Part shown: positions 16,997 to 49,430 of the stretch, one piece after another
Layout: every line of letters starts with the position of its first letter
Position numbering within the stretch: position 1 is the first letter of the stretch
Origin: Paraphysomonas bandaiensis
Taxonomy: Eukaryota; Protista; Chrysophyceae
Direction: 5' to 3'
DNA length: 64,000 bases
NCBI GenBank assembly: GCA_965644295.1
Contig: CBFFRP010000119.1
Location: forward strand, 62,001 to 126,000
Notes under the pieces: generated by a model
The model's input: only the letters and a program-made list of their open reading frames with translations
Database searches by the model: none
Told to the model about the DNA's origin: nothing
Made by a program: the position numbers and the translations under genes

Positions 16997-17113
16997 ATAT
17001 ATAGTGTAAGTGATATAAAAACAAGGGTACAAGATACTCAGGTAAAAATCTATATGACTCTAAAGATGCACACTGATTTGGAAGTTCATATGACGAACAC
17101 TTAGACCACATCA

Positions 17114-29419: not shown

Positions 29420-31805
29420 GATCGGGCAGTCCATCATCGATGCACTGTCTTTTTGCGTCCACAAGTGCTTGTTGAAGCAAAAAGGAACAGCAGCAGTTTG
29501 AGGCATCATCGTGAGGTTAATTCTTATCGCAAGTGTGTCATGAATGATAATCAAACTGCTTAAATTGATGCTGTCATCCTCATACAAATATGCTTTTCTT
29601 ATAATCTGTAACAGAATGCCAGTCTAAACAGTCAAAAAGCAAGTGCCAGTAAAATGATCACCATATCCGCCCAAACTATAACACTAAACTATCGCTGTGC
29701 AGTATACGGTCCAAACTATTCGGCCGTCATCTCTTTCATATTTATTACTGATCAGGCGAAGAAACCGTTGTTTGCTACTATTACTTTGATTCACCATCTC
29801 TGCTCATGATGAGTTTGATGGATTCATTCCTCTGATTTCATTGTTTCATTAAGTAAACATTTTTTGTAAACGTGGAAATTTTGCAAAGTTTTAGGAAAAA
29901 CTTGGGGATTTTACAGTATTCATGTAGAAGCGTTTATGTACGACCGTAGTGTTATTGTTAAGCAACGAAAAATACCAGTGTGTAACAGAAGTTGACATTA
30001 TTTATTTGCTAAGGTTTGCTATTTTCAATTGAAAAGATGAAATTATAAACACTACATTCATGATAAACAAAACCGAAGTTGTATTCGATTTACAACTCTA
30101 TAGTGTACAAACCACACACTCACCAACTTCTACTTCAGTTTCATACTACACAATATAATGTACTAATTACATATATATATATATCTTTTGATTTTTATAT
30201 CTAATACTGCACTCAATTGCATATATTATAGAATCTTCAGATCTCAACAGTGTGGTGTGGCACATACAGAGTATGTTTTAAACGAAGCAAATAATAAATC
30301 TTTTTCCCTGTCACAGATTCCCACCTCTCCGTAGCTCCGTAGATGCTGTTAACAATGGACATTTCACTGAAGTTAACTTTGCTCTACGCGTAAACCGTAA
30401 CCTTGCTGTTGAACACAATGCACTTTCAAGTAAGAAATTATGATTATTATTCTGAACACTTCACTACATATTCGTGTAACATATGTTGAAACATCTGTTC
30501 TTATAGCAACATCTGTTTATCATATGTTCATCAGTCAGTTCTATATCTTGTATAGTCACACATCAGTAACTGAATTTAATTCCTTTGTAACTACTATAAT
30601 CACCCGTTACACCTATGAGTTGACTTTACCTATAATTGCACACTGTTAACTCACTTCAATTGCACAATATATATCACATCATATTGCAGAACTCAACACT
30701 CCCACTCAATTGGATGTAGTTAACCATTCTAAAATTTGTGAAGAACATTGCTATCGGATACGCAACCACCGAACCTCATAGGACACTGGTGGACGTATGA
30801 CTCCGCTGGTATATAGCTAGCTCCCACCATTCATTCACCTCTATCTAGTTACGACGAACTCTCTTTTACTCCTACTCCTCAAGAACATCACAACACCCTG
30901 CAACGTCATCACTGCCCACAGAAACGTGTTTATTCTATAAACTGAATACACACAGCAACCTAGGAGCAACGTATAACCGCATACTAATAGTACACCACAT
31001 CCTACGTTTTACTTTCTACCTAAATTCCCTTACAAAAACAATATACCGCCACTTTGGTGCATTTTAGCATTCAAGAACCCAAAATCCCTAATATCCAGGT
31101 TAATACGTAAATACAACCCTGCATACCAGGTATTGCATATCACAATTGATTCCCCACTGAGCCTGGTATGAACACTCGTGCACCTCGAGTATATAAAATC
31201 CATTCTCCGTTGATGTGATATGTACTTGCCCCCCTATAGGGTAGTATGGGTAATGCCAGTACGTATTCCTATGGAAGTATACACTGCAACTGCTACACTG
31301 GAATACTGACCCACATAACTTTATTATAAATTTGTGGCAGGTTTCACATTGCGTGAAGTCACCATCAGCAGATCATAGTGTACATCATCATCGGCAGATA
31401 AAGTGGACATCACACCTGAACGTTGATTCCGTGTGTAGGTACATCATAGCTCATTACCCCATCTTAATGAGTATAACATAGAATATGCATCCTAGACATG
31501 GTATAGGGTCCTGATGATATAATGTTCTTGATATAGATTCCTAAACAAATATCACAGGGTCCTGAATGGGCAATGCATGCAGTTTTGGTACTATAGCCAC
31601 GTAGATAGGGCATAGGAAATGCCACGTGGTCACACTGCCTCCCCCCCTCGTTTTTGTGAGAAATCCATGGTCGCACACATGTCAATGGGACTAGGTTTGA
31701 AATAGCCATCAATACGAACCACCATGGAGTATTATTATCATATTATAGATGTAATTCGGAGAATACTTAAAAATTTCACATCGTAAATTGTAGAGTAGGA
31801 ACACT

Positions 31806-34800
31806 TTATACCGACTGATTAACTTGTGGAAATTTGCTGGCAAATTCCTCGTCTACCAAGACCATTGTAGAAGAATCAAATTCTTTATGGGCAAAACAAT
31901 GGATATGGTAATTATCAAGTCGGAAAGTTTGTTTAGTCATCACATTTTTAGTTGAGAGTATCCGTTTGGAACTTTTATGATACCAATGTGTGAAGACAAA
32001 ACGTGCAACATAAGTAATAAAATGAGAGTCCGGTAACTCCAGGCTTTCATACCACAGGTCCCCGAAAACTCTTAAGTCAACATAAGCCTCATCACCTGGC
32101 TGAAAACTAGTGATAGGCTGCTTACGGATTTTTGCAATATATTCCTTTGCCTCTTTAACCGGATAAATAAGATGATATAAATATCTTTTCCTAGAACAGA
32201 AATCGGCATATGGAATAGAGTCAAAAATATCCTTACTGAATGGAATGTCACGAACATCACCATCCTGAAATTTCACAGTAAAAACTAGAGAGGTTCTGGT
32301 GTCTCTATCACCTCTGTAGTATAGAATTGTGTCAATCACATGCTGTTCATGGTCTCTACAAGCCATGTTATACGCTGTGTCTTGATCACCCGCAAAAAGT
32401 TTAACCTCCCGCACATCGACTTTCACAACTTGTCCTGTCACCAAATGTCTGCAATCAATGTCATTTTTATATTGAGATATGACTTTGAAAGGACCCATAT
32501 AACGGTGAGACATCTTAGGATGGACTTTAGCACCCTTGTCAAACAAAACAAGATCTCCCGGCTGATATCTGTTCTGCTTGTCGGCCGGTATACCTTGGCT
32601 AGCCCGCTCTTGCACAAGACGCTGTTGATAAGCATGCGAAGCTGCCCTGAGCTCACGTAGGTTATCATTAAAACGTTTAAGTCGTGCATGCGCATCCTGG
32701 GAAACAGAGTCGGTGTCCACGTTAAAATAACGCTTATCCTCCGATCCAAAAGTCAACTCGAATGGTGAGAATCCCGTCTCAGATGACACTTCAGAGTTAA
32801 GAATGTGTTGGACACTGGCGATCCAGCTAGGATCTTCAAACACATCTGTGCGCTCTTGACGCTCGCTAGCATCATATACTAGAGCTCGTAGGTGACGAAC
32901 TACCTCACCTATGGTACGTTCTGAGCCATTCGCATGCCGGTTGGCTATACTAAACGTATGGCGCATTCCCATGTATTCCGTTAGCTGCTGGAATAGATCC
33001 GAAGTTAAATCCGGACCCTGGTCTGAAATCACGACGTCAGTGTGACCGTAATAGGACCAATACTTCCAAACAGTATTCGCTAAATTCAAAGCCGTTACTC
33101 CTTTAACTGGTTCCAGAAAAACGAGCTTTGTGTGGAGGTTCACTATCACATTGATATGCGTGTAACCGTCCTTGCCATGTGGAGTAATCTCCACTGCATC
33201 AATAGGTGGTTTTAGGTTGCGCACTATGGGAATAAGTGCTTCCTTCATGGCTAACCGGGTTTTCACGCAAGTTGGACAGTTGGATATATATTCTGCTACC
33301 ACCTGATATGGTATTCCATGCCCTGGAAAACGTTTATTGAGACGAATCCAAGTAGCTTTCCCTCCAAGATGACCCACGCGAGAGTTGTGTACCTCACGCA
33401 AGCATTCTTCACGAGATATATTCATGGAAGGTTGTTCTTGGTCACTGAGATCCAACGGGTCCATAAAATTTCCTAGGAATGAGAAATACTCAGAATCCTG
33501 ACAGTCCTCTCCCAGAAAATAGGCATCATCCCACATAGAATCATCCAAGAACATGCCCGACAAATAGGCCAGTTGGTGTTCCCTGGATAACCAGTCTGCT
33601 AACCAATTCTGTGCTCCAGAAATATGTCGGATTTTAAAATTGAATGATTGCAAGAATATTCTCCATCTAACAATTTTTGGTACCTCTGACGCTTCCATCC
33701 AGAGCAAATTGTTATGGTCTGTTTCTATTGTAAACTGCTTTCCAACTAAGTAATACGCTAGCTGTTTAACCGAATAGTAGATACCGTAGCCCTCCTGCTC
33801 TATAGTAGCCCATTTCATTGCTTGCTCTGAAAACTTTTTAGAGATAAAGGCAATAGGTTGCAATTGAGCTTCTCCTGACGGTAATACCTTCCGTTGTAGT
33901 AGTACAGAACCTATACCTAGCTCACTTGCATCAGTCCGTAAAATCCACTCTAACTCATAATCAGGGTAGAAGAGCTCACACGCATCTTGTAAACCTTTTA
34001 TGAAACGTTTGTACTCAGCTTCATAATCATGACGCCAAGTAGATTTATTCCAATTGAAAGATTTCTTAGTGAGGTCCGTTAAATGACCTACTAAGTCAGA
34101 ATACTTTGGCGTGAAGCTGGAAAAGAAAACTCCCTTGCCTAGCAGAGATCTAGCTTGTTTAGTCGATGATGGCATGGGTATGTTTGCCAAGGCTTCCTTT
34201 TTATCCGGACACACTTCATACGATTTGTGTTTGCACACATATCCAAAAAAATTAACTTTCTTAAAACCAAGCCAGCTCTTAGCCATTTTCAACTTTATGT
34301 TTCTCTCCAGACATCTGTCAATAACTCGTTCCAACTTTTCATAAGCATCCTGGGGATCGTTGGCTAGTATTAGCATATTATCAAAGATAACGATAGCCCA
34401 GTCTGAAAAGTCGGCAAATATCTCCCGAACAACCTCTTGCAGAACACCAGTAGCAGGAGCTATACCCTCTGGCATGAAATTAGGTGCAAACTGTCCCCAT
34501 GGCGTTTGAATGGACAATTTCTCGGAAGTTTCCTCATCTAAAGGTATTTGATGAAACGCATTTGTAAGATCTATATCCAAATAATATGGAAAATTAATGA
34601 TCTTGTCAAGTTCATGTTTGACATTGGGAATAGTGTAGTTTCCCACATGCATGTGATCATTTATCTTAACGTAATCCCCACAAAATCGAATATAAGGAGG
34701 TGTAGCCTTGGGCGCTACTACAAGACAAGAAGCCCATGGCGATCTACTCTTCCGGTAAAAATACCCACACAAACGACGAAATTCTTTCTCTGAGGCTTCC

Positions 34801-35774
34801 CATAGTTTTGGATTAATAGGCCTCGCCTTGGGTTTGATCCGATCCGGAAGTGTATCTTTCCACTTAATTTTTAAAGGTTCAACACCTTTTACACCAGACC
34901 ACTCATCTGGTACAAAGACTTTAACCGCTTTAGTTCGTAGGAGATGCATCACATTTGTTTGTTCCTTCATCTCGCTACTAACATGGGTCTCCAACAACTG
35001 TTCATAGTCTTTTAAAGCTTCCGCTCTAGTCTTTCCTAAGAATACCAAAGCTTCTTTAAATTGAACCGGCAATTCGGAATCCTCTTCTTCCGGTGCAATT
35101 TGAGTACTCGCTTTAGACCATGGTTCCACTATTTGTCCATGCTCTAAACCAGACAAATCATCATGAGTCGAAATCTTCTTGGCATCTGTTTCTATCTCAT
35201 AAGATGTTTGTTCAAAAGCATGCCTCATCAGTTCACACATAAAGGGATATAAAGTACCAGTAAGTGCCGGCAATCCAAGTATGACATCATTATGTTTCAT
35301 GTCAATAATTAGGAAATCCCCTTTGAACTGATACTGTTTTCCATAAGGGTCAGCCAACAAAAGATTGAGTCTGACTCCTTGTGTGACTGTTTTTATAGTA
35401 GTACTATCCGCCAATACTACTCTATGATTCGCATCGTATAAAAATTCGGGGTTTAGCTCTGGCATTAAACTCTCAACCAGACCCCTAGACACATAGTTGG
35501 CTGAAAGCGCTCCCGTATCGCAAAGTACGGTGATCAATTTTTCCGAATTCTCTCTCAAATTATTGTTCATTATTAGCTTAGCTACAGTATGTGCTGATGT
35601 CATTTTTCGCGTATTAGGAAAGCAAGCATACAGCTTAGCTTGCCCCTCGGTTTGCACAGAACACAATGCCGCCGTGAATGTAGACTCTTCAAATTGTAAG
35701 CAACAATCGTCATCCCCGTCACACCCATTAACTACACTGACATCCTGCGCTCCCCGCACGCAATGGTCCTTCCA
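31806..35774 (-). CDS. Gypsy-A pol (PR-RT-RH-IN-chromo-like)
   Basis: LCDTGA protease; RFCGDY, DLTNAFHQI, IFDN RT; TDASELGIG/ETDH RNase H; HHCC and SDQG integrase; chromo-like HVIDTILYYRG..FTVKFQDG. Confidence 0.93.
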   Translation of the reverse strand, partial: WKDHCVRGAQDVSVVNGCDGDDDCCLQFEESTFTAALCSVQTEGQAKLYACFPNTRKMTSAHTVAKLIMNNNLRENSEKLITVLCDTGALSANYVSRGLVESLMPELNPEFLYDANHRVVLADSTTIKTVTQGVRLNLLLADPYGKQYQFKGDFLIIDMKHNDVILGLPALTGTLYPFMCELMRHAFEQTSYEIETDAKKISTHDDLSGLEHGQIVEPWSKASTQIAPEEEDSELPVQFKEALVFLGKTRAEALKDYEQLLETHVSSEMKEQTNVMHLLRTKAVKVFVPDEWSGVKGVEPLKIKWKDTLPDRIKPKARPINPKLWEASEKEFRRLCGYFYRKSRSPWASCLVVAPKATPPYIRFCGDYVKINDHMHVGNYTIPNVKHELDKIINFPYYLDIDLTNAFHQIPLDEETSEKLSIQTPWGQFAPNFMPEGIAPATGVLQEVVREIFADFSDWAIVIFDNMLILANDPQDAYEKLERVIDRCLERNIKLKMAKSWLGFKKVNFFGYVCKHKSYEVCPDKKEALANIPMPSSTKQARSLLGKGVFFSSFTPKYSDLVGHLTDLTKKSFNWNKSTWRHDYEAEYKRFIKGLQDACELFYPDYELEWILRTDASELGIGSVLLQRKVLPSGEAQLQPIAFISKKFSEQAMKWATIEQEGYGIYYSVKQLAYYLVGKQFTIETDHNNLLWMEASEVPKIVRWRIFLQSFNFKIRHISGAQNWLADWLSREHQLAYLSGMFLDDSMWDDAYFLGEDCQDSEYFSFLGNFMDPLDLSDQEQPSMNISREECLREVHNSRVGHLGGKATWIRLNKRFPGHGIPYQVVAEYISNCPTCVKTRLAMKEALIPIVRNLKPPIDAVEITPHGKDGYTHINVIVNLHTKLVFLEPVKGVTALNLANTVWKYWSYYGHTDVVISDQGPDLTSDLFQQLTEYMGMRHTFSIANRHANGSERTIGEVVRHLRALVYDASERQERTDVFEDPSWIASVQHILNSEVSSETGFSPFELTFGSEDKRYFNVDTDSVSQDAHARLKRFNDNLRELRAASHAYQQRLVQERASQGIPADKQNRYQPGDLVLFDKGAKVHPKMSHRYMGPFKVISQYKNDIDCRHLVTGQVVKVDVREVKLFAGDQDTAYNMACRDHEQHVIDTILYYRGDRDTRTSLVFTVKFQDGDVRDIPFSKDIFDSIPYADFCSRKRYLYHLIYPVKEAKEYIAKIRKQPITSFQPGDEAYVDLRVFGDLWYESLELPDSHFITYVARFVFTHWYHKSSKRILSTKNVMTKQTFRLDNYHIHCFAHKEFDSSTMVLVDEEFASKFPQVNQSV

Positions 35775-38700
35775 TCAAGGTCGGGAATCACCGAAGCGAT
35801 CCCTTCTCAAGATAGAAGTTGGATTGGATCTACCAGTGGAACCATCCTCAGCTTTCAGGAAAGCATTGAGCTTATCCCTCATCTCAACAGCCGAGGTTCT
35901 CAAGCACTGAGAATTGTGGTTGTATTTGCACTGTGGCTTGTTGCATTTCCCGTACAACATCTGCCTCAGGCAACCGAATTTCTCAACTCTCGAACTCGTA
36001 TCACCAGCAGGTTTATCCTGAGAAGAAGCCATAAAAGAAACCTCTTGCTCATTAACAACTGCTGTGGGATCAGGTTCCAGATCCTGCGATGATGTAACGT
36101 CCTTGGCTGAGCCACGACGTAAATCAATGTTACCCTCTTCATCATCTGAAGAACTAGGGTATTCGAGATTTATCTGCTCCGGACCTCGATCAAAATCCGA
36201 ATCATCAGAAACATATCCATCAATGTGAGTGAGAGCATGTGAATCTCTGTTATTCCGATGATCATAGTCCTTGTAAGAAGTAGACCGCATCGGAGACGGA
36301 TGTTTCTCATTATTCTTGGAAAACAAATCCCTTTTCCGTTTGTTGTACTCATCAAGTTTGTTTTTAGCCTCAATGTTAGCCTCAAACGGTAACTGACGAG
36401 CTGCTAAGCAAATCTGATAATGATCTACTAAAATAGCCGTAAATTCATCGAAGAACTCGTTCATCGTGTCAAACTGTAGTTTATTCATGCACCCAAAGAC
36501 ATAACGAACATAATCCCTATCGTTCAAGTTTTTGAATAGTCTTACGAGCCCATATTCTTTGTCATCTACTCTTGGACACCAATCCTTATTAAACTCCAAC
36601 ATAATGGATAACATGGTTCGAAACAAATCAATAAGTTTCAACTGTTGGAAGTAAAACTGTTCGAACGTGACAGTTGTCACTTTCCTCCACTCCATAATCT
36701 TTATGTGTCTAAGAGAATCTCGTAGCTCCTCATAGAATCCCACACAATTAAAAACCCGAGTTTCTTTGGCTATTACACGCAGTAAGTCGGACAAATCCAT
36801 CTCTGAAATCTCCGCATGACCGAGATGATATACTTCTCTTAGATGATCTCTTAATTCTCCAGAAACAACCTTTTGTAGACGCACAGTGGTCTGTTCCTCT
36901 TCTTGAAAATCCAAGATTTGTTTGACAGCTCTAGCCACTTTAGAAAGCTTAAGTTCATTGATACGAATATAACAACACCCGGTTTGATAACCAGGGTGTT
37001 GGCTCGTAAACAATAAAACTACAATAACACCTACACTGAACCAACAAAGAACAGTAATAACGGTATTATTATTAAAACACTTTTCCAAGTCTAGACCTAA
37101 ACTTAGTTAGTGACTCCCGCAAAGAGCCACCGCGCAATGGTATACCGCCGGCACCCAAGATCACTAGCACCAAGCTTTGGTCTAACTTAAAACAAGTGAT
37201 AAACACCATAGAAGCATATATGCACACACACACACTCCTAACATGGTACAACACACGTGGTGTCATCACACCACCACAGGTTGCGTAACTCTTCAATCAA
37301 AACTGAAAAATACACAGCAACCTGATAGGGAGTGACTCACCAGCATATGCCGAGAGTACACCGTATACTACGTATCTATACCCTACCAGAGACTGAAAAC
37401 CCCCTAATCCAGGAAATACATAAATACGGTACGTATAGTACGTATAGTACGCACACCACATTTGCAATCGAACCCCAATAAGCCTTGCATAAACACTCGT
37501 GCACCTCAAGTGTACAATAGCGACTTCTCTCTTATGATGGTCACATGTACTTGCCCCCCTATAGGGTAGTACGGGTAATACATGTATGTATGTATATGGA
37601 AGTATATACTGCAACTGCTATACAGGAATACGGGCCCACATAACTTTGATATAAATTTGCAGCAGGTTTCACATCGACCGAAGTCACCAGCAGCAGATCA
37701 TAGTCGTACATCATCATCAGCAGATAAAATTGGACATCATACCCGAACGTTGGCTCAATATGTAGGTACACTGTGGTACATTACCAATGTCCAAATGGTG
37801 TTGCATAATATGTATCCTGAACACAATGAAGGTCCTAAAGCAATATATAGGGTCCTGATATAGGGTCCTAAACCAACATAGGGTCCTAAAAGTCAATGTA
37901 ACCATGCATGTGACTCAATAGCGTGATACTATAGCCACGTAGATAGGGCATGGGAAATGCCACGTGGTCACACTGCCTCCTCCCCCGTTTTGGTTGTCTA
38001 CAGAATAGCATGCCTCCGGTATTCACAAATGCCAACGGGACTAGGTGTTACGTAGCCGTCAAAACGAAAATCCCCGGAGAATTATAAGTTATATAATAAT
38101 AATTTGATATGGAATAGAATTGAGAGAGCAATAAGAATAATATGTGTCTAGCGTGGAACTTAATAAGACGCACGGACCTGAGGATATTTGTTGGCAAAAT
38201 CCTCGTCCACGAGTACCATTGTGCTAGCATTCACCTCGGAATGAACAAAGCAATGCACTAGGTAATTATCATAACGGTAGGTACGGAGAGTGAGAAGATC
38301 CTTCACCGATAAAACCCGCTTAGAGCTCTTGTGATACCAGTGTGTGAACTGGATAGGAGCTACATAAGTAATGAGATGAGAATCTGGTAATTCCAACTCA
38401 TCGTACCAAGCATCACCATAAATTCGCAAATCAACATAGGCTAGATCACCAGGTTGAAACTGAGTGATCGGTTGCCGGCGGAAATCCGCGATGTATTTCT
38501 TTGCATAGTCAGCAGTATAAATAAGATGGTAAAGATATCGTTTTCGAGAACAAAATTCAGCATAAGGAACAGAATCAAAAATATCCTTGCTGTAAGGAAC
38601 TTCTCGGACATCTCCATCTTGAAAACGCACAGTGAAAACCATGGTAGATCGAACCTCTCTATCACCACGATAATAAAGAATTTCATCAATAACATGTTGA

Positions 38701-41700
38701 TCCTGATCGCGTAAAGCCATTTTATAAGCAGTATCAGAATCTCCCGGAAACAATTTAACATCGCTCACGGAAACACGAACCACTTGCCCAGTGGCGAGAT
38801 GTTGACAATCTACGTCATTCTTGTATTGGGACTTGACTGAGAAAGGTCCCATATACCGGTGAGACATCTTAGGATGAACCTTTGCCCCTTTGTCAAATAA
38901 GACAAAATCTCCCGGTTGATACCTATTCTGTCTATCGGGATGCACACCTGTTCCTGCCCTCTCCGTGGCTAACTTTTGCTGATAAGCTTTGGAAGCCTCT
39001 CGGAGTTGGGCTAACTGATCATTAAGCGCAGTGAGTCGAGCATGCGCCCGATCTGGAAGGTCTTTGAGATCCATGTTCAAATAGTCAAGATCCTTTGAGC
39101 CAAACGTCAACTCAAAAGGCGAAAATCCTGTTTCCGAAGACACTTCAGAATTTAGAAGATATTGAACACTTGCTAACCAACTAGGGTCCTCAAAGATGTC
39201 TTTTCGTTCCTCCCGTTCACTGTAATCATAGACCAGAGCACGTAGATGTCGAACTACTTCTCCAATAATTCTTTCACATCCATTTGCATGGCGATTGGCA
39301 ATACTAAAAGTGTGCCGAACACCCATGTACTCCGTCAACTGTTTGAACAAATCTGAAGTCAAATCCGGTCCTTGATCCGAGATTATTAGATCGGTGTGAC
39401 CGTAATGACTCCAGTATTTCCATATAGTATTTGCAAGATTAAGAGCCGTCACACCTTTGACAGGTTCAAGGTACACAAACTTGGTGAAAAGATTGACCAC
39501 CACGTTGATATGTGTATATCCCTCTGCACCGTGAGGTGTAATCTCAACAGCATCTATACCAATCGCGCTACGAGCATTTGGGGGCTTGAGATTTCGTACG
39601 ATCGGAATAAGAGCCTCCTTCATAGCCAACCTCGTTTTCACACAATTTGGGCACTTAGAGATATAATCCTCAACAACCTTGTAAGGAATATTATGACCCG
39701 GGAACTCTTTGTTTAAGCGTATCCAGGTAGCCCTTCCCCCCATGTGTCCAACTCGCGCGTTATGAACCTCACGCAACGCCGTCTCCGGTGATACATGAGA
39801 TGTTGGAGGGTCCCCAATCTCTCGATCATCCGGGTTCATAAAGTTACCCAGAAAGTTAAAGTACTCATACTCATTACAGTCATCCCCCATGAAATAGGCG
39901 TCATCATATTCCTCCTCTGGGAATATTCCAGAGAGTATAGCAACCTGATGCTCTCTAGATAACCAGTCCGCCAACCAATTCTTGGCACCAGATATATGAC
40001 GAATGCTGAAGTTGAAAGACTGCAAGAATATCCTCCATCGTGTAATCTTTGGAACATCCGAAGATTCCATCCACAATAAATTGTTATGGTCGGTCTCAAT
40101 TGTGAATTGCTTGCCTATTAAGTAATAAGCCAAGTGTTTAACACTGTAGAAAATTCCATATGCCTCTTGCTCTATAGTTGACCACTTCTGAGCTTGGGCA
40201 GAAAACTTTTTGGAAATGAAAGCTATAGGCTGCCACTGTATGCTCCCATCCTCTAATATTTTCTTTTGCAATAACACTGAACCTATTCCCAACTCACTAG
40301 CGTCAGTACGCAATGTCCACTCAAGATTATAATCCGGATAAAACAGCTCACAAGCGTCTTGTAGTCCAGCAATGAAACGACGATACTCTGCCTCGTAGTC
40401 ATGCCGCCATGTGGACTTATCCCAATTGAAACTCGACTTTGTCATGTCAGTCAAGTGAGCAACTAAATCAGAGTATCTAGGCGTAAAACTAGAAAAGAAT
40501 ACCCCTTTACCCAGCAACGATCTGGCCTGTTTGGTGTTAGTAGGCATTGGAATCTTGCCGAGAGCCTCCTTCTTATCGGGATTAACCTCATATGACTTGT
40601 GACGGCAAACATATCCAAAGAAATCCACCTTTCTAAACCCCAACCAGCTTTTTGGCATCTTAAGTTTCACATTCCTTTCAATACATCTGTCAATGATCTT
40701 CTCGAACTTCTCATAAGCATCCCTGGCATCATTAGCCAATATAAGCATGTTATCGAAAATGACTATGGCCCACTCAGAGAAATCATCGAATATTTCTCTC
40801 ACAGTTTCCTGTAAAACACCCGTGGCCGGAGCAATACCCTCTGGCATGAAATTAGGAGCAAATTGCCCCCAAGGCGTCTGAATTGATAGGCGCTCAGAAG
40901 TTTCATCATCTAATGGAATTTGATGAAAAGCATTTGTTAAATCTATATCCATGTATAGCGGAAAGTTGATAATCTTGTCCAACTCATGCTTAACATTAGG
41001 AATCGTATAATTTCCCACTTCCATGTGCTTGTTAATTTGCACATAGTCACCACAAAAACGGATGTATGGAGGAGTGGCTTTGGGAGCAACCACTAGGCAT
41101 GAAGCCCAAGGAGACCGACTCTTTCGGTAGAAATAGCCACACAGTCGCCGAAACTCCTTCTCCGAAGCCTCCCACAGCTTAGGATTGATCGGGCGAGCCT
41201 TTGGTTTCATTCGGTCCGGGAGAGTGCTTTTCCATTTTAGAGACAAAGGGTCCACACCTCTCACACCGCTCCATTCGTCAGGCACGAACACTTTTTCAGC
41301 CTTCGTTGACAACAATTCCATAATCTTAGTTTCACTTTTCATTTCATCGCTGACATGAGTCTCTATCTGCTCATGATAGTCTTGGAGGGCTTCCTCCCTA
41401 GACTTTCCTAAGAATGTCAACGCATCCTTGAATTGAACCGGTAACTCAGTTTCCTCATCCTCTGGGGCAATAGCATCACTCGCTCTTGACCATGGGTGCA
41501 CACGGTCATCAGAGTCAACCGTGTCCCCTGCCAGAGATGACAACACATTCGAATTTTCATTATCGGAGACACCCTCGATTTGAGTGTCATGTGCCTCACG
41601 CATAACAGCACACATGAAAGGATATAATTTCCCAGTCAGCGCAGGCAACCGAAGGCAACAGACAACAAGCCCAGAGAATCAAGCCCAAAGAAGCGTGTCG

Positions 41701-43398
41701 CAGTTAGTTTCTTATAAGAGTGTGAAACAACAGCGCAAAGACAGAAATTTCTGTACGAGCAGTAAAGTAAATATTTACTATAACAACACCCGGTTTGATA
41801 ACCAGGGTGTTGGCTCGTAAACAATAAAACTACAATAACACCTACACTGAACCAACAAAGAACAGTAATAACGGTATTATTATTAAAACACTTTTCCAAG
41901 TCTAGACCTAAACTTAGTTAGTGACTCCCGCAAAGAGCCACCGCGCAATGGTATACCGCCGGCACCCAAGATCACTAGCACCAAGCTTTGGTCTAACTTA
42001 AAACAAGTGATAAACACCATAGAAGCATATATGCACACACACACACTCCTAACATGGTACAACACACGTGGTGTCATCACACCACCACAGGTTGCGTAAC
42101 TCTTCAAAACTGAAAATACACAGCAACCTGATAGGGAGTGACTCACCAGCATATGCCGAGAGTACACCGTATACTACGTATCTATACCCTACCAGAGACT
42201 GAAAACCCCACAATCCAGGAAATACATAAATACGGTACGTATAGTACGTATAGTACGCATACCACATTTGCAATCGAACCCCAATAAGCCTTGCATAAAC
42301 ACTCGTGCACCTCAAGTGTATAATAGCGACTTCTCTCTTATGATGGTCACATGTACTTGCCCCCCTATAGGGTAGTACGGGTAATACATGTGTGTATGTA
42401 TATGGAAGTATATACTGCAACTGCTATACAGGAATACGGGCCCACATAACTTTGATATAAATTTGCAGCAGGTTTCACATCGACCGAAGTCACCAGCAGC
42501 AGATCCTAGTCGTACATCATCATCAGCAGATAAAATTGGACATCATACCCGAACGTTGGCTCAATATGTAGGTACCCTGTGGTACATTACCAATGTCCAA
42601 ATGGTGTTGCATAATATGTATCCTGAACACAATGAAGGTCCTAAAGCAATATATAGGGTCCTGATATAGGGTCCTAAACCAACATAGGGTCCTAAAAGTC
42701 AATGTAACCATGCATGTGACTCAATAGCGTGATACTATAGCCACGTAGATAGGGCATGGGAAATGCCACGTGGTCACACGAACTTTGCAAGTTCTTTCCT
42801 CACGCATTACAACAGTCTGTTGCACATTTGGAAGGTTGGCATTCTTTTTCAATTCCCTGAACAGCTTCCCAGGTTTCTTGCCTCCTAACAGAGCTTGAGT
42901 TCTAGTAGGGAATTCAGAAGCCACCTGCTGATCACCATCCTCCTCAGCATTACCATTTGACTGAGCAGTAGAAGTATCTTCCTCCTCCAACAATTCTCTT
43001 ACAGATTCATCCCGCCAAGGAGTGCGATAGTGCTCCGCCAGATTATGCAGAGTAGAGTATCTCCTTGTATCACGTTTCTTTACCGGTTTCGGTAACGTGT
43101 CAGGAACTGTAGGTGTTCCTTTCGTAACTGTTTCATCCGCCCCTGGGATATTTTGATCTTCCCTTAAAATCGTGGGGCTTTGCGCTCTAGAGCCGACAGG
43201 TGTACCTCTACGTGAGGCTCGCTCTTCGAGTCGCGTGACTCTCAACGTTAAGTCATCTATTCTCGTATCGAATTTCCTTTCCAAGGCATCGAAACGTGCA
43301 AGAATGATTTCGAGCATTGAAGGCTCTAGATCCTCCTTAACACTGCCTTCAGAACCAGAGTGGCTCTTAGGGCTACTCCTACCAACAGGAGTTTGCAT
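35775..43398 (-). CDS. Gypsy-A gag, split by Gypsy-B (43398-42779 + 36963-35775)
   Basis: Removing Gypsy-B and one CGAA copy restores the frame ..EERTCKVR|INELKLSK..; coiled-coil N-terminus; CCCH-type motif near the C-terminus. Confidence 0.85.
36968..42778 (-). mobile_element. Gypsy-B: sister-family element lacking gag and most of the protease, inserted in Gypsy-A gag
   Basis: LTRs 36968-37972 and 41779-42778; TSD CGAA (36964-36967, 42779-42782); PPT GGGGGAGGAGGCAG; the 5' leader joins directly to LPALTG at ~41648. Confidence 0.93.
38160..41648 (-). CDS. Gypsy-B truncated pol (RT-RH-IN-chromo-like), uninterrupted 1162 codons
   Basis: Colinear with Gypsy-A pol from LPALTG onward; same IFDN motif; intact integrase segment NARSAIGIDAV. 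Confidence 0.92.
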   Translation of the reverse strand: MPALTGKLYPFMCAVMREAHDTQIEGVSDNENSNVLSSLAGDTVDSDDRVHPWSRASDAIAPEDEETELPVQFKDALTFLGKSREEALQDYHEQIETHVSDEMKSETKIMELLSTKAEKVFVPDEWSGVRGVDPLSLKWKSTLPDRMKPKARPINPKLWEASEKEFRRLCGYFYRKSRSPWASCLVVAPKATPPYIRFCGDYVQINKHMEVGNYTIPNVKHELDKIINFPLYMDIDLTNAFHQIPLDDETSERLSIQTPWGQFAPNFMPEGIAPATGVLQETVREIFDDFSEWAIVIFDNMLILANDARDAYEKFEKIIDRCIERNVKLKMPKSWLGFRKVDFFGYVCRHKSYEVNPDKKEALGKIPMPTNTKQARSLLGKGVFFSSFTPRYSDLVAHLTDMTKSSFNWDKSTWRHDYEAEYRRFIAGLQDACELFYPDYNLEWTLRTDASELGIGSVLLQKKILEDGSIQWQPIAFISKKFSAQAQKWSTIEQEAYGIFYSVKHLAYYLIGKQFTIETDHNNLLWMESSDVPKITRWRIFLQSFNFSIRHISGAKNWLADWLSREHQVAILSGIFPEEEYDDAYFMGDDCNEYEYFNFLGNFMNPDDREIGDPPTSHVSPETALREVHNARVGHMGGRATWIRLNKEFPGHNIPYKVVEDYISKCPNCVKTRLAMKEALIPIVRNLKPPNARSAIGIDAVEITPHGAEGYTHINVVVNLFTKFVYLEPVKGVTALNLANTIWKYWSHYGHTDLIISDQGPDLTSDLFKQLTEYMGVRHTFSIANRHANGCERIIGEVVRHLRALVYDYSEREERKDIFEDPSWLASVQYLLNSEVSSETGFSPFELTFGSKDLDYLNMDLKDLPDRAHARLTALNDQLAQLREASKAYQQKLATERAGTGVHPDRQNRYQPGDFVLFDKGAKVHPKMSHRYMGPFSVKSQYKNDVDCQHLATGQVVRVSVSDVKLFPGDSDTAYKMALRDQDQHVIDEILYYRGDREVRSTMVFTVRFQDGDVREVPYSKDIFDSVPYAEFCSRKRYLYHLIYTADYAKKYIADFRRQPITQFQPGDLAYVDLRIYGDAWYDELELPDSHLITYVAPIQFTHWYHKSSKRVLSVKDLLTLRTYRYDNYLVHCFVHSEVNASTMVLVDEDFANKYPQVRASY

Positions 43399-44776
43399 CT
43401 TCCACCTTAGTTGCTGTTACACTCTTTAGTTTATATACCCACACGATTTTTCACCTCAGAGTTACGCAGCTCCCTTGGCTTCAGAGACTAACAAAGATCG
43501 ACAAGGAGGGAATTAAAAATTCGCTCACAGGTCTCAATGAAATAACTCAAATCCAGTCCCCAGTCCCCCGGAAGAAACTGACAAATCCACAGACCTGCGT
43601 AAGAATCCACCAAGACACCAAGACACCACTCAACACACTGACACAAGACACCCCTGCACAACGCACACAAGCAAGGCACACAGACAGGTCTATCTAAATG
43701 ATGTGTATCAAGAATTAATCACAAGAATTCTTGTGCGAGCAAATAAGTAAATATTTACTATGACGTAACCCGGTTTGATAACCAGAATCACGGCTCGCAG
43801 TACAGGTATAGCACACAAACACGCAAGTGTGAAAACAATGTATAATTAATTATGTTTTGACTGCTCTAGGAAAAACCTAATGCTCAGTAAATGATACCCG
43901 CCAAGTATCACCACGCAAGGAACACCGCCAGTGCAACAACATCGTTGGCACCAAGCACTTCGGTTAAGCCTAAACAAGTACATAACACCATAGCATACAT
44001 GTTACACCCACTCCTACTCCTCAAGAACATCACAACACCCTGCAACGTCATCACTGCCCACAGAAACGTGTTTATTCTATAAACTGAATACACACAGCAA
44101 CCTAGGAGCAACGTATAACCGCATACTAATAGTACACCACATCCTACGTTTTACTTTCTACCTAAATTCCCTTACAAAAACAATATACCGCCACTTTGGT
44201 GCATTTTAGCATTCAAGAACCCAAAATCCCTAATATCCAGGTTAATACGTAAATACAACCCTGCATACCAGGTATTGCATATCACAATTGATTCCCCACT
44301 GAGCCTGGTATGAACACTCGTGCACCTCGAGTATATAAAATCCATTCTCCGTTGATGTGATATGTACTTGCCCCCCTATAGGGTAGTATGGGTAATGCCA
44401 GTACGTATTCCTATGGAAGTATACACTGCAACTGCTACACTGGAATACTGACCCACATAACTTTATTATAAATTTGTGGCAGGTTTCACATTGCGTGAAG
44501 TCACCATCAGCAGATCATAGTGTACATCATCATCGGCAGATAAAGTGGACATCACACCTGAACGTTGATTCCGTGTGTAGGTACATCATAGCTCATTACC
44601 CCATCTTAATGAGTATAACATAGAATATGCATCCTAGACATGGTATAGGGTCCTGATGATATAATGTTCTTGATATAGGTTCCTAAACAAATATCACAGG
44701 GTCCTGAATGGGCAATGCATGCAGTTTTGGTACTATAGCCACGTAGATAGGGCATAGGAAATGCCACGTGGTCACA

Positions 44777-47553
44777 CTTTACCTTGGGTACCTCTGCGAT
44801 AATTTGTGCAGTAGTCTTAAATTTTTCCCCAAGATTTCGCTCCCTCTGTTCAATGAATATTGGACCACTCAAAGCCTTGGTATATATATCAGCCATCTGT
44901 TGTCGACTGCTCACATGAATTAATTTCGCTGTATTAAACTGTTCGGGATCCACATGCTCTCTAATCATATGATACTTAATCTCAATATGTTTCGATCGTT
45001 GATGTTGCACTGGATTTTCCGATATATCCTGAGCACTTTGACTATCCAGGAATAATGGTGTGGGCTCGTCAATTTTCAATCCTACTTCACCAGTCACCCC
45101 CCGAGACCATATCATTTCCTGTAATCCATTATATAAGCATTGATACTCTGCTTGCATAGTCGATGTAGCTACAGTAGACTGAAGTTTGGAACCCCACGAT
45201 AGTGGTCCACCAGCTCCAAACATAACATAACCTGAAGTTGATCTCCTCGTCAACGGGTCACCCGCCCAGTCAGCATCCGTGAACATATGAAGATCAAAAT
45301 CTTTCCCTCTATATTGAATGCCTTTTTCCGTAGTACCTCGTACATACTGCATTAAATGTATCATTAGTTTACATACAGTGATATTCACTTTCGTTGAGAA
45401 TCGTGACAATACTCCCACTGCATATGATATATCCGGCCTTGTATTCATAGATAAATAGAGTAACGCTCCTATTAGTGGACGATAGGGAAAATTGTCAACT
45501 AGTTCCTGCTCTTCAGTCGAATGCACATGTTCCACTCCCACTTTGATCCTATCCATGACATCACTAGGTAGTGGGTATCGCCGAGTCTTGTCCCTTGGAC
45601 CCAGAAAGTCCACATACTTCGCCAATACCTTTTTGATGTACACTGTCTGGTCAAGTTTGAGACAATTCTGAGTTCTCGTCACTCTCACGTTCAAAAACTG
45701 GCCAATCTCATTCATATCTGTAATATCGAACCTTTCACATATACTCGTCGCTTAATTTCCAAAATAATACTCGTATCTCGACATGCTATCAGCATATCAT
45801 CTACATATATTACTAACAGAACTACTAATTCACCCCTGATCCGTGTAAAATATAAACATGGGTCAAGTATACATGATATAAAATGTAAGGACTTATACCA
45901 TGACCGTGGTGAGCTTCGAAGACCATATAAACTTTTCTTCAGTTTAAAGCAATATCCTGGTGGCAATTTGAAATCTGGTGTTGCATACTTATACACACAT
46001 CTCCTTTTATATCTGCATATACAAGAATGCATTAGATACGTCGAGTTGATGCACCACCATATTCATAACAAACGCGATAGCTAATAGCAATCTTACTGTT
46101 ACCGCTTTTACCACTGGAGTATAATTGTTGGCTCTACCAACCTCATGGCCTCCGCATTCAAGTACCACAAGTCTTGCTTTCTATCGTGGAATCGCACCCT
46201 CCTTGTTGCGTTTCAAAGCAAAGACATACTCAGGATTCAAATTGCAGTGACACTGGGGTAGGGATGATGGGCTTAACTTCCATTACTTCCCTTCGTTCCA
46301 GTCTGTCACGCTCAGCCTGTCTTGCTGTCAATGGAGTGACTCTGGGGTAGGTATGGGCTTAACTTCCATTACTTCCCTTCGTTCCAGTTCGTCACATTCA
46401 GCCTGGCTGAACTCCATTGCTTCCGTTCCGGCAACTCCAAGGATTCGGAATATGTCTGAGGCACCTTAGGTCCCGCTGACGAGCACCAGATGGAATCTGC
46501 CTCCTCTAGTAGGCTGCACTCCACTTCGTCACACGAAGGTAATACGTGCTTCTCCCCTACTACTGACACATTCGTCACCACCCTTGGAGCCCTTGTGCGC
46601 CTGCCCCTAGTTGAGCGATCTGATGGAGCTTCCTCTCCCGGAGCACTTACGAAGTCAGAAGGGGATGGAACCGTCCCAGTCAACTGCTGTAATAAATGTC
46701 CGCTGGTCCCGTCGTCACGAGATCCAGAACTAGCAGATACTCTTGTCACAAGGTCTTCACTCATCCGCGATGATGTGAATAGGAGTCTTAACTTCCAGTT
46801 GCTCCTCACCACCTGACATCAGGGATCTATATCCCACAGTTAGACCTCTTTCCGAATCTATATTCGCGTGGTCTTGTTGTACAGTTGGCCGCCATCTTCA
46901 CATGGGTTTTGTCGATTAAGTAATCGAAGTCTCTAATATTTCGTTCCTGAGGATCCACAGCAACCATGGCCTCGTCCATTTCTCGATAATAATCAGCCGA
47001 TTTCTCGATAATAATCCGCCGATCTCTCAGGCACAGATTCATCGAATAAAACATGCACAGACGTAACTATAGTATCTCCAATCAATACTTGGTATCCCAT
47101 TTGCTCCTCTGGGAACCCTACAAAGTATCCAGTCTGTGCCTTTTCTTCCCAGTCTTTCCTGCGATCTGCCTTCGGGATGAGAACGTATGCCTTGCACCCC
47201 CATTTCCGTAACCAAGAAAAATCTGGCACCGTTCCTCCAGGAACACACTCGTAGGGTGACATCCACCCTCTATAGGTCTTTGTGGGTAATCTTCTAAGAA
47301 CCCAGCATGCATGTCTAAAGGCTTTCCACCACTCCGCTTTTGGCATACCCGATGACAATAAAAGTGATAATGTCATTTCTCCTAGTGTCCTGAATTTCCG
47401 TTCTGAAACACCGTTTAATTCTGGTGTCTCCCTAGTAGTGTAGGAGAATGTGGTTCCAAATTTTTGTAACAAGTATTCTTTGATTCGCCTGTCCATCAAC
47501 TCTGGTCCACCATCAGCATGGTACTGCTGTATCCTGTTCCACCCTGGGTATTT
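44777..47553 (-). pseudogene. Copia-3 left arm: integrase-RT-RNase H with frameshifts and small duplications; continues at 30866-30699
   Basis: QYHADGGPE, ELNGVSERKFRT, LKKSLYGLRSSP, YVDD, FTDADWAG, RSKHIEIKYH; local duplications at ~46247-46404 and ~46979-47022. Confidence 0.88.
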
Positions 47554-48802
47554 TGGTAGCGAGTGGTAGCACTGAAGATACGAAGGAGGACAACAAGGTG
47601 CTGAAGTTCGACAAGTATCAGGCGGAGGCGTCTGCTCAAAAAATTAGGATTCATTTGGAAATTAAGCGACGAGTATATGTGAAAGGTTCGATATTACAGA
47701 TATGAATGAGATTGGCCAGTTTTTGAACGTGAGAGTGACGAGAACTCAGAATTGTCTCAAACTTGACCAGACAGTGTACATCAAAAAGGTATTGGCGAAG
47801 TATGTGGACTTTCTGGGTCCAAGGGACAAGACTCGGCGATACCCACTACCTAGTGATGTCATGGATAGGATCAAAGTGGGAGTGGAACATGTGCATTCGA
47901 CTGAAGAGCAGGAACTAGTTGACAATTTTCCCTATCGTCCACTAATAGGAGCGTTACTCTATTTATCTATGAATACAAGGCCGGATATATCATATGCAGT
48001 GGGAGTATTGTCACGATTCTCAACGAAAGTGAATATCACTGTATGTAAACTAATGATACATTTAATGCAGTATGTACGAGGTACTACGGAAAAAGGCATT
48101 CAATATAGAGGGAAAGATTTTGATCTTCATATGTTCACGGATGCTGACTGGGCGGGTGACCCGTTGACGAGGAGATCAACTTCAGGTTATGTTATGTTTG
48201 GAGCTGGTGGACCACTATCGTGGGGTTCCAAACTTCAGTCTACTGTAGCTACATCGACTATGCAAGCAGAGTATCAATGCTTATATAATGGATTACAGGA
48301 AATGATATGGTCTCGGGGGGTGACTGGTGAAGTAGGATTGAAAATTGACGAGCCCACACCATTATTCCTGGATAGTCAAAGTGCTCAGGATATATCGGAA
48401 AATCCAGTGCAACATCAACGATCGAAACATATTGAGATTAAGTATCATATGATTAGAGAGCATGTGGATCCCGAACAGTTTAATACAGCGAAATTAATTC
48501 ATGTGAGCAGTCGACAACAGATGGCTGATATATATACCAAGGCTTTGAGTGGTCCAATATTCATTGAACAGAGGGAGCGAAATCTTGGGGAAAAATTTAA
48601 GACTACTGCACAAATTATCGCAGAGGTACCCAAGGTAAAGAGAGTTCGTCGTAACTAGATAGAGGTGAATGAATGGTGGGAGCTAGCTATACCAGCGGAG
48701 TCATACGTCCACCAGTGTCCTATGAGGTTCGGTGGTTGCGTATCCGATAGCAATGTTCTTCACAAATTTTAGAATGGTTAACTACATCCAATTGAGTGGG
48801 AG
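47554..48802 (+). pseudogene. Copia-3 right arm: PBS, start of gag, large deletion, RT C-terminus/RNase H, PPT
   Basis: TGGTAGCGAG at 47554-47563; gag-like STEDTKEDNKVLKFDK; from ~47654 it is the near-exact reverse complement of 45763-44777 + 30866-30699; ORF 47702-48658. Confidence 0.88.
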
Positions 48803-49154
48803 TGTTGAGTTCTGCAATATGATGTGATATATATTGTGCAATTGAAGTGAGTTAACAGTGTGCAATTATAGGTAAAGTCAACTCATAGGTGTAACGGGTG
48901 ATTATAGTAGTTACAAAGGAATTAAATTCAGTTACTGATGTGTGACTATACAAGATATAGAACTGACTGATGAACATATGATAAACAGATGTTGCTATAA
49001 GAACAGATGTTTCAACATATGTTACACGAATATGTAGTGAAGTGTTCAGAATAATAATCATAATTTCTTACTTGAAAGTGCATTGTGTTCAACAGCAAGG
49101 TTACGGTTTACGCGTAGAGCAAAGTTAACTTCAGTGAAATGTCCATTGTTAACA

Positions 49155-49430
49155 GATGCTGATATTGTTCAAAGCCCTACCTTCGATAAGGCCATCGTGA
49201 AGATTCAGAACGGAAACGAGGAATCTCTGACTCGTCAAGAGAGAGCAGCGGTTGCGAGCTTTCGAACGGATGCAGGAGAAGCTAAATCACTGGATAAGGC
49301 CGTCGAAGTGGAACGCTGCTGCTGCATTTGAAAGCCACAGAGCTACCAAGAAGTTACGACTACAGCTTGACACCCAGTATTGATCGACCACAAGCACATA
49401 TTCAGTACAACTAATGTTGTGGAGACACAC
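49155..49430 (+). pseudogene. hAT-like transposase remnant that was the Copia-3 target (left part ~30315-30346)
   Basis: Joining the flanks gives LRSSVDA|DIVQSPTFDKAIVKIQNGNEESLTRQERAAV, similar to the 28150 remnant; later HIFSTTNVVE. Confidence 0.55.

What the first reader, a model, noticed from the sequence alone, without database searches (positions are those of the whole stretch)
41766..43759. No tRNA PBS: a conserved 14-bp palindrome sits at the primer-binding position of both Gypsy families
Seen: straight after each 5' LTR there is no TGG. Instead AGTAAATATTTACT (41766-41779 and 43746-43759), a perfect palindrome overlapping the last LTR base, is identical in A and B although neighbouring sequence diverges. 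By eye I found no matching 11-mer in the LTR as Tf1-type self-priming needs. Inference: an RNA ending ..UUUAC-3' could fold back, or pair with the co-packaged genome, so that its 3' C pairs with the first base after U5. That is the register needed to prime minus-strand DNA and would be a new self- or dimer-priming mode; a dimerisation signal is an alternative.
Basis: partly seen in the sequence, partly recalled or inferred. Interest (0 to 1): 0.82.

Follow-up and report, generated by a model that had tools for sequence, protein, structure and literature searches.

The report
Palindrome replaces tRNA primer site
A whole clade of marine-protist Gypsy retrotransposons has, exactly where the tRNA primer should bind, a perfect palindrome that changes sequence between families but never loses its symmetry, which suggests that two copies of the element's RNA pair there to start DNA synthesis.

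Summary
Two nested minus-strand Ty3/Gypsy elements, A and B, each carry AGTAAATATTTACT. Its first A is the last base of the 5' LTR.

- **No conventional primer site.** No TGG follows the LTR. Nothing of 8 nt or more in the LTR or elsewhere in the element is complementary to the site. No tRNA gene found in the genome matches even its 6-nt start.
- **Relatives.** Twelve of 12 families chosen only by Pol similarity (48-100% identity; this genome plus metagenomes) have a perfect palindrome at the same junction. It takes five forms: AGTAAATTTACT, AGTAATATTACT, AGTATTAATACT, AGTGAATTCACT and the 14-mer.
- **Covariation.** All changes are compensatory, including the central bases, which only a two-molecule duplex can pair.
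- **Coexistence.** The 12-mer and 14-mer forms are both multi-copy in this genome, so one host primer cannot serve both.
- **Setting.** The site lies in a loop closed by a U5-leader stem, next to a U5 hairpin, which is the retroviral and Tf1 PBS architecture.

Best reading (about 0.5): a self-complementary PBS, with minus-strand synthesis primed in trans from a cleaved partner RNA. Priming itself is inferred, not shown. I found no description of this in the paper library searched.

The parts
41766..41779 (-). Element A palindrome AGTAAATATTTACT. Base 41779 is the last base of the 5' LTR, and 41778 (G in RNA sense) is the first base after it.
43746..43759 (-). Element B palindrome, the same 14-mer in the same position relative to the B 5' LTR.
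41779..42778 (-). Element A 5' LTR (TGTGACC...GTTATA). A 4-bp target duplication CGAA lies at 42779-42782 and 36964-36967.
36968..37972 (-). Element A 3' LTR. The polypurine tract GGGGGAGGAGGCAG lies just upstream in RNA sense, at 37973-37986.
43759..44776 (-). Element B 5' LTR.
30868..31634 (-). Element B 3' LTR. Its U5 part is cut off at 30868 by another insertion. The polypurine tract is at 31635-31649.
41786..41810 (-). Element A U5 hairpin (ACACCC-U-GG-UUAUCAAA-CC-GGGUGU), ending 6 nt before the LTR end.
   Evidence: sequence read; MFE fold; coordinates
43765..43791 (-). Element B U5 hairpin (GUGAUUC-U-GG-UUAUCAAA-CC-GGGUUAC). The stem differs from A's and pairs through G-U in RNA sense only.
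41813..41819 (-). Element A, U5 strand (UACGAGC) of the U5-leader stem. It pairs with 41754-41760.
41754..41760 (-). Element A, leader strand (GCUCGUA) of the U5-leader stem.
43793..43799 (-). Element B, U5 strand (UGCGAGC) of the U5-leader stem. It differs from A by a compensatory A-U to G-C change.
43734..43740 (-). Element B, leader strand (GCUCGCA) of the U5-leader stem.
41741..41754 (-). Element A second palindrome ACAGAAATTTCTGT in the leader. Its sequence differs from B's but the symmetry is kept.
43720..43735 (-). Element B second palindrome CACAAGAATTCTTGTG.
38160..41648 (-). Element A open frame (RT, RNase H, integrase). This copy lacks most of gag compared with other A copies.
31806..35759 (-). 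Element B pol (RT, RNase H, integrase). B gag (42721-43398, continuing below 36967) is interrupted by the insertion of A.

Best explanation
The palindrome is the element's primer-binding site, and its partner is another copy of itself.

**Proposed mechanism**
1. Two element RNAs, presumably co-packaged genomes, pair through the palindrome. This gives an 11-13 bp RNA duplex directly 3' of U5.
2. One strand is cut near the 3' edge of the duplex. Between C and U is the cut that matches the integrated LTR end. By analogy with Tf1, the element's own RNase H would make the cut.
3. The new 3'-OH is extended on the partner RNA through U5 and R as minus-strand strong-stop DNA.

**Shown**
- The position of the palindrome, its perfect symmetry and its covariation.
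- The absence of any other primer site or partner sequence.
- The PBS-like RNA architecture around it.

**Inferred**
- That the duplex forms in particles.
- The cleavage, the enzyme that does it, and the exact register (uncertain by 0-2 nt).
For: **1. Position.** The first A of the palindrome is the last LTR base wherever both LTRs could be compared. That holds for A, L083 and L089 (4-bp target duplications GCAA and GGCT) and L095.

**2. Ubiquity.** Families were chosen only by Pol similarity and contig length. All 12 (Pol 48-100% identical to B) carry a perfect palindrome at the LTR/leader junction.

**3. Covariation.** Five versions exist. AGT..ACT is invariant, and pairs 4:9, 5:8 and 6:7 change only by double compensatory changes. 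The 14-mer adds a self-complementary TA at the centre. In the count, 100% of cells pair, and 0 of 500 shuffles reach the covariation score.

**4. Central bases.** The centre stays self-complementary in every version (AAUU, AUAU, UUAA). Only a bimolecular duplex can pair those bases.

**5. Two versions in one genome.** AGTAAATTTACT gives 115 hits against 9 in the control, in at least 7 families with different flanks. It sits beside the multi-copy 14-mer families A and B.

**6. No other partner.**
- No complement of 8 nt or more in the LTR or anywhere in element A.
- No second copy of 9 nt or more in three other complete elements.
- No tRNA gene with ATTTAC or TATTTAC next to a B box; hits were at or below the control count.
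- At most 4 Watson-Crick (7 with G-U) anchored pairs with the 23 mitochondrial and about 8 nuclear tRNAs recovered.
- No Rfam family in the region.

**7. Architecture.** A U5-leader stem of a different sequence in nearly every family, plus a U5 hairpin, enclose the palindrome. The combined shuffle test for U5-leader complementarity gives p = 3e-4. This is the layout described for retroviral PBSs and for Tf1 (PMC7175516).

**8. Precedent.** Tf1 primes from its own RNA after RNase H cuts an 11-bp RNA duplex (PMC7175516).

**9. Contrast in the same window.** Other LTR elements here use an ordinary TGGTAGCGAG PBS.
Against: - There is no direct evidence of cleavage or priming. The RNA data available were assembled contigs, which show no molecule ends. 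One metatranscriptome contig simply runs through the site.
- The palindrome alone would also fit a pure dimerisation signal.
- The outer AGT..ACT never varies. That points to sequence-specific recognition by integrase, RT or RNase H, or possibly a short trans partner, in addition to symmetry.
- If both paired RNAs were cut, no RNA would link the PBS to the leader and the second strand transfer would fail. The model therefore needs asymmetric cleavage.
- For the three variant-sequence families (L084, L090/91, L094) the LTR end is inferred from the conserved context and was not measured.
- The tRNA survey was based on patterns. It would miss tRNAs without a canonical T arm, and it would miss other small RNAs.
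- The 12-mer search outside the elements excluded sites followed by T.
Confidence: 0.5

Rival explanations
1. The palindrome is only a dimerisation (dimer-linkage) signal. Minus-strand synthesis is primed by something else that was not recognised here.
For: Self-complementary sequences in 5' leaders are the classic dimer initiation signal of retroviruses (general knowledge). Covariation that preserves a palindrome is what such a signal predicts. A second covarying palindrome lies nearby in A and B.
Against: No other conserved or tRNA-complementary block exists within 30-40 nt of the LTR end in any of the 12 families. A dimerisation signal has no reason to start exactly on the last LTR base in every family. 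The second palindrome in A and B could already serve for dimerisation.
Confidence: 0.2
2. A host RNA primes at this site. It could be a tRNA fragment, an organellar tRNA or another small RNA ending ...UUUAC, and the symmetry would be incidental.
For: Half-tRNA priming exists in copia, Ty5 and several plant lineages (PMC6317226). The outer bases AGT..ACT are invariant. The tRNA survey here was incomplete.
Against: The inner bases differ between families, and two versions coexist in one genome, so no single host RNA fits them all. No tRNA gene carries even the shared 6-mer next to a B box. The 12-mer occurs outside the elements only about 9 times, none of which looks like an RNA gene. Perfect symmetry in 12 of 12 families is not expected for a tRNA complement.
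Confidence: 0.07
3. The palindrome works at the DNA level or with a protein. It could be a symmetric binding site for a dimeric host or element protein (transcription, integrase end recognition), or a signal in plus-strand transfer.
For: Palindromic DNA is typical of dimeric protein sites. The invariant outer triplets and the conserved U5 end (..ACCNGGGTT..ATA) would suit recognition of the LTR end by integrase.
Against: Swaps of A:T to T:A or G:C at symmetric inner positions, and a 2-bp change in half-site spacing, are hard to reconcile with one protein's base contacts but are neutral for a duplex. Only the first base of the palindrome is present at the 3' LTR end that integrase sees. The primer would still be unexplained.
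Confidence: 0.1
4. One RNA folds the palindrome into a hairpin, and the fold-back primes within the same molecule.
For: MFE folds draw a 4-5 bp mini-hairpin at the site in most monomers.
Against: A hairpin leaves the central 4 nt unpaired, yet these stay self-complementary in every version. A 3' end made inside such a hairpin would have no U5 template ahead of it. The stem is only 4-5 A-U-rich base pairs.
Confidence: 0.05

Closest known systems
Tf1/sushi-type self-priming Ty3/gypsy elements (Tf1, Tf2, Tcn1 clade)
   Same: They have no tRNA PBS and the primer comes from the element's own RNA. The primer is made from an RNA-RNA duplex of about 11 bp directly after U5 (PMC7175516, PMC6317226). 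A U5 stem-loop sits next to the PBS.
   Different: In Tf1 the partner of the PBS is the first 11 nt of the transcript, inside the LTR. Here no such complement exists. The PBS is its own complement, so the partner must be a second molecule, and the primer would be an internal cleavage product rather than the RNA's 5' end.
Retroviral dimer initiation and dimer-linkage palindromes
   Same: Both are self-complementary sequences in the 5' leader that pair two genomic RNAs. Both keep their symmetry while the sequence drifts.
   Different: Retroviruses carry a separate tRNA PBS. Here the palindrome occupies the PBS position itself, starts on the last LTR base, and no other PBS is present.
Dictyostelid Skipper elements (polypyrimidine tract in place of the PBS)
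   Same: A Ty3/gypsy lineage that lost the TGG PBS and has no complement in its LTR. [quoted passage not shown]
   Different: Skipper has a degenerate polypyrimidine stretch, not a palindrome, and it is a different host group.
Diatom Ty3/gypsy cluster (GyDi; Maumus et al. 2009, PMC2806351)
   Same: A marine stramenopile Ty3/gypsy lineage described as diatom-specific. The relatives found here come mostly from marine metagenomes and metatranscriptomes.
   Different: Membership was not tested because no GyDi sequence was at hand. That paper does not discuss the PBS.

Membership tests
Ty3/gypsy (Metaviridae) LTR retrotransposon | Direct LTRs with a target-site duplication and a polypurine tract before the 3' LTR | tested here: met
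   The A LTR pair is 98.8% identical with a CGAA duplication. The polypurine tract is at 37973-37986.
Ty3/gypsy (Metaviridae) LTR retrotransposon | Pol domain order RT, RNase H, integrase | tested here: met
   Pfam RVT_1, RT_RNaseH, Integrase_H2C2 and rve hit in that order in both A and B.
Ty3/gypsy (Metaviridae) LTR retrotransposon | tRNA-complementary PBS (TGG...) within a few nt of the 5' LTR | tested here: not met
   No TGG follows the LTR, and no tRNA complement was found.
Tf1/sushi-type self-priming | The 5' end of the transcript, within the LTR, is complementary to the PBS over about 11 nt | tested here: not met
   The longest complement to the site in the LTR is under 8 nt. There is no second copy of 8 nt or more in element A and none of 9 nt or more in L083, L089 or L095.
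Tf1/sushi-type self-priming | A U5-IR-like stem-loop and a closing stem around the PBS | tested here: met
   A U5 hairpin and a U5-leader stem are present with compensatory changes between A and B and different sequences in other families. This rests on prediction and covariation only.
Tf1/sushi-type self-priming | RNase H cleavage of an RNA-RNA duplex creates the primer | not testable with these tools
   Testing this needs biochemistry or mapping of RNA ends. Only contigs were available.
Half-tRNA priming (copia, Ty5, Bianca type) | The PBS is complementary to an internal tRNA segment, usually the anticodon arm | tested here: not met
   No tRNA gene has the 6-7 nt seed near a B box. At most 4 Watson-Crick anchored pairs form with the tRNAs recovered. 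The survey was not exhaustive.
Retroviral-type dimer initiation site | A self-complementary sequence in the 5' leader, kept symmetric across relatives | tested here: met
   Five versions, all perfect palindromes, with 3 of 6 pairs covarying.
Retroviral-type dimer initiation site | It is distinct from, and additional to, a tRNA PBS | tested here: not met
   No separate PBS exists in any of the 12 families.

The most novel reading that the evidence does not exclude
This would be an obligately dimer-primed retroelement. Genome dimerisation and primer selection would be one and the same RNA-RNA contact. The whole clade would then replicate without any host primer RNA. The same clade also carries an unusual xFDN reverse-transcriptase active-site motif.
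Probability: 0.4. Interest if true: 0.9.

Novelty: new variant of a known kind. Interest (0 to 1): 0.78.

Why it matters
How minus-strand DNA synthesis is primed is a defining step for every LTR retroelement. The options described so far are a whole tRNA, a half tRNA, and the Tf1 way, in which the RNA's own 5' end folds back. A PBS that is its own complement would be a further solution. It would remove dependence on host tRNAs and tie priming to the presence of two genomes. It would also explain why these elements spread across many marine protist genomes while keeping 12-14 nt under strict symmetric constraint.

The idea is directly testable with mutants. Break one half of the palindrome, restore it with a different palindrome, and complement two half-mutants in trans.

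On the practical side, LTR annotation tools that require a tRNA PBS will misjudge this abundant clade.

Tried and rejected
- **Tf1-type self-priming: rejected.** No complement of 8 nt or more to the site exists in the LTR or elsewhere in the element.
- **tRNA or half-tRNA priming: nothing found.**
  - ARAGORN found no tRNA in the window.
  - The Rfam tRNA model on the genome scored only 63 of about 2,500 candidates.
  - 23 mitochondrial tRNAs and about 8 nuclear kinds were recovered, none complementary.
  - Genome-wide patterns joining the 6-7 nt seed to a B box gave counts at or below the control. One tRNA 3' trailer with TATTTAC was judged to be chance.
- **12-mer outside the elements.** About 9 loci, none of which looks like an RNA gene. 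Sites followed by T were not covered.
- **Ribozyme or known RNA family at the site: none**.
- **RNA ends from public runs: not obtainable.** All runs were held as contigs. They show only that family A sequence, and the uninterrupted B sequence without the A insertion, occur in marine metatranscriptome assemblies.
- **L094 LTR end.** The 3' LTR lies outside the locus fetched, so its LTR end is unverified.
- **Literature.** Searches for a palindromic or self-complementary PBS found nothing relevant.
- **Original Tf1 papers.** They were not held, so Tf1 facts are cited from PMC7175516.
Full report
**What is in the window**

Both elements lie on the minus strand.

Element A has LTRs at 36968-37972 and 41779-42778. 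It carries a 4-bp target duplication (CGAA) and a polypurine tract at 37973-37986. It is inserted into the gag gene of element B.

B has its 5' LTR at 43759-44776. Its 3' LTR (30868-31634) is truncated by another insertion.

Pfam finds RT, RNase H and integrase in the Gypsy order in both elements.

The LTRs read TGTGACC...(T/C)ATA, so they end in TA rather than CA.

**Check of the observation**

AGTAAATATTTACT occurs exactly twice, at the stated coordinates. The chance expectation is 0.04.

In RNA sense its first A is the last LTR base. I verified the LTR end of family A on other copies in the genome. Eight 3'/solo LTRs end at ...GTTATA and are followed by unrelated sequence. In contrast, 23 of 23 5' LTRs continue with GTAAATATTTAC.

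A and B share the 17-nt block ATAGTAAATATTTACTT, while the sequence on both sides differs. No TGG follows either LTR.

**Is there a conventional partner?**

- *Own LTR.* The best complement to the 30 nt after the LTR is 7 nt, and that match is a separate structural stem. Element A holds no second copy of 8 nt or more of the palindrome. Three other complete relatives hold none of 9 nt or more. Tf1-type priming is therefore excluded.
- *tRNAs.* The window has none. The genome is 62.5 Mb, and other first-stage notes call it an apparent stramenopile. Its mitochondrial contig of 61.6 kb carries 23 tRNAs. Those tRNAs, plus the nuclear ones I could recover, form at most 4 Watson-Crick (7 with G-U) anchored pairs with the site.
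- *Genome-wide patterns.* Patterns that join TATTTAC or ATTTAC to a tRNA B box gave 30, 8 and 95 hits against 61, 8 and 107 in the controls. None of the hits is tRNA-like.
- *The 12-mer outside the elements.* It occurs at about 9 loci, none resembling an RNA gene.
- *Rfam.* It finds nothing in the region.

As a contrast, two other LTR elements in the same window have a normal TGGTAGCGAG PBS.

**Relatives**

A search with B Pol found hundreds of relatives, mostly in marine metagenomes. I picked hits by identity range and contig length alone, then fetched their DNA.

Every family has a perfect palindrome at the LTR/leader junction:

| Palindrome | Where found | Pol identity to B |
|---|---|---|
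| AGTAAATTTACT | L083, L085, L086/87, L088, L089 (two elements), L092/93, L095 | 48-76% |
| AGTAATATTACT | L094 | 49% |
| AGTATTAATACT | L090/91 | 53% |
| AGTGAATTCACT | L084 | 65% |
| AGTAAATATTTACT | A and B in this window | B is the query; A's internal region is about 72% identical to B at the DNA level |

In L083, L089 and L095 both LTRs are present. In all three the first A of the palindrome is again the last LTR base, with 4-bp target duplications GCAA in L083 and GGCT in L089. For L084, L090 and L094 the boundary is inferred from the conserved U5 end (..ACCNGGGTT..ATA) and from the position upstream of gag.

On the ten 12-mer sequences, a pair count gives the following:
- 100% of cells are paired.
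- 3 of 6 pairs have changes on both sides.
- No change is one-sided.
- 0 of 500 shuffles reach the observed covariation score.
- All slid controls are far lower.

**Two versions in one genome**

In the window's own genome AGTAAATTTACT gives 115 hits against 9 in the control. The hits fall in at least seven families with different U5 ends and leaders. One of these families matches the TARA scaffold L088. The 14-mer families A and B are also multi-copy here. A single host RNA cannot match both versions.

**What the symmetry says**

The inner positions are free to change as long as the partner position changes with them. This includes the two central bases, and the 14-mer's extra TA is itself self-complementary.

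A hairpin cannot pair its central 3-4 nt, so a hairpin would leave the centre unconstrained. Yet the centre is AAUU, AUAU or UUAA in every version. On the most conservative view (an A/T-only alphabet and two or three independent events) the chance of this is roughly 1/16 to 1/64. That is suggestive rather than overwhelming. It points to a bimolecular duplex.

The bare duplexes are predicted at -10.8 to -15.4 kcal/mol.

The outer AGT..ACT never varies. Two explanations are plausible. The terminal A may be needed by integrase, or RT and RNase H may recognise those bases.

**RNA context**

In A and B a 7-bp stem joins U5 (UACGAGC in A, UGCGAGC in B) to the leader (GCUCGUA in A, GCUCGCA in B), with one compensatory change between the two elements.

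A U5 hairpin with the apex GG-UUAUCAAA-CC has different stems in A and B. B's stem pairs only in RNA sense, through G-U pairs.

Most other families have a U5-leader stem of their own sequence. Examples are GUCGAG/CUCGAC in L085, CGGAGU/ACUCCG in L089 and L095, AGCACU/AGUGCU in L084 and CAAGAAC/GUUCUUG in L094. A combined shuffle test for U5-leader complementarity gives p = 3e-4.

Independent MFE folds put the palindrome in the loop closed by this stem, next to the U5 hairpin. This is the layout known around retroviral PBSs and required for Tf1 self-priming (PMC7175516).

A and B also have a second palindrome further into the leader: ACAGAAATTTCTGT in A and CACAAGAATTCTTGTG in B.

**Best explanation**

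The site is a self-complementary PBS. Two element RNAs pair through it. One is cut near the 3' edge of the duplex, and its 3'-OH is extended on the other through U5 and R.

With a cut between C and U, the remaining primer-template duplex is 11 bp in the 12-mer families. That is the same length as in Tf1, whose RNase H cuts an RNA-RNA duplex to make its primer (PMC7175516).

Cleavage must be asymmetric, with one RNA as primer and one as template. Otherwise no RNA would link the PBS to the leader for the second strand transfer.

All of this is inference. The only expression data were contigs. Family A sequence, and the uninterrupted B sequence without the A insertion, do occur in poly(A) and random-primed marine metatranscriptome assemblies. 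One such contig runs through the site. No molecule ends can be read from contigs.

**Rivals**

- A dimerisation signal only, which would leave the element without a primer site.
- A host RNA primer, which is contradicted by the covariation and by the coexisting versions.
- A protein or DNA site, which fits poorly with inner-base swaps and a changed half-site spacing. Only one base of the palindrome is present at the 3' LTR end.
- An intramolecular fold-back, which offers no template and cannot pair the centre.

**Novelty**

The paper library holds descriptions of tRNA priming, half-tRNA priming and Tf1-type priming (PMC6317226, PMC7175516). It also holds an unexplained polypyrimidine 'PBS' in Skipper elements (PMC5006619). 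I found no report of a palindromic PBS.

Other first-stage notes on this genome mention the same palindromes elsewhere. They are unverified, and I do not count them as independent evidence.

**Limits**

- The tRNA survey is pattern-based and incomplete.
- Three LTR ends are inferred, not measured.
- The priming register is uncertain by 0-2 nt.
- There is no experimental readout.

Noticed in passing
window 34377-40760 (RT of A about 40755-40766, of B about 34374-34385), and proteins P0001-P0120: The RT catalytic motif reads IFDN (WAIVIFDNMLI) instead of YxDD in both A and B. At least 109 of the 120 best Pol relatives have xFDN or IHDN, so this is a trait of the whole clade, which also carries the palindromic PBS.
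   Followed up: partly
window 41600-41650; loci L002-L022: The A copy in the window is a deletion derivative lacking most of gag. Other A copies diverge from it beyond 41642 and carry a gag-like frame of about 612 aa that is 33-40% identical to B gag. Metatranscriptome contigs also leave the window sequence at 41642-41644.
   Followed up: partly
window 36964-36967, 42779-42782; L083, L089: LTRs of this clade end in TA (..CATA, ..TTATA), sometimes in CA or AA, rather than the canonical CA. Target duplications are 4 bp.
   Followed up: partly
window 5411-11096 and 17112-22621: Two other minus-strand LTR elements have identical LTR pairs (263 and 297 bp matched) and an ordinary PBS, TGGTAGCGAG. 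This fits a tRNA ending ..CUCGCUACCA, possibly initiator Met.
   Followed up: partly
L083 9047-10036, L085 107-931, L086 6243-6950, L087 795-1502 and 8204-8911: Relatives carry an antisense ORF with a SET (PF00856) domain between pol and the end of the 3' LTR. In L083 it lies outside the LTR repeat.
   Followed up: no
G000 contig C669 (L076-L082): A contig of 61,647 bp at 21.8% G+C with 23 tRNA genes is presumably the mitochondrial genome. It includes an odd tRNA-Ile(AAU) call with an oversized anticodon loop.
   Followed up: no
G000 contig C11, about 118464-128837: A tandem array with a 519-bp period and 20 or more units, containing ATTTACTTGACGGGAAGCCTTCGGGTAGCGGTTCGG... Its nature is unknown. 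The pattern searches did not pick up either palindrome version in it.
   Followed up: no
window 29067-30866 and 44777-49155: Inverted copies of another LTR-like repeat flank the B element (30346-30866 against 49155-48637; 44777-45763 against 48640-47654).
   Followed up: no
G000 C120:3105-3237 and C265:34830-34962: Two AGTAAATTTACT palindromes lie 75 bp apart, with related flanks in opposite orientation. This may be two elements head to head or a rearranged junction.
   Followed up: no
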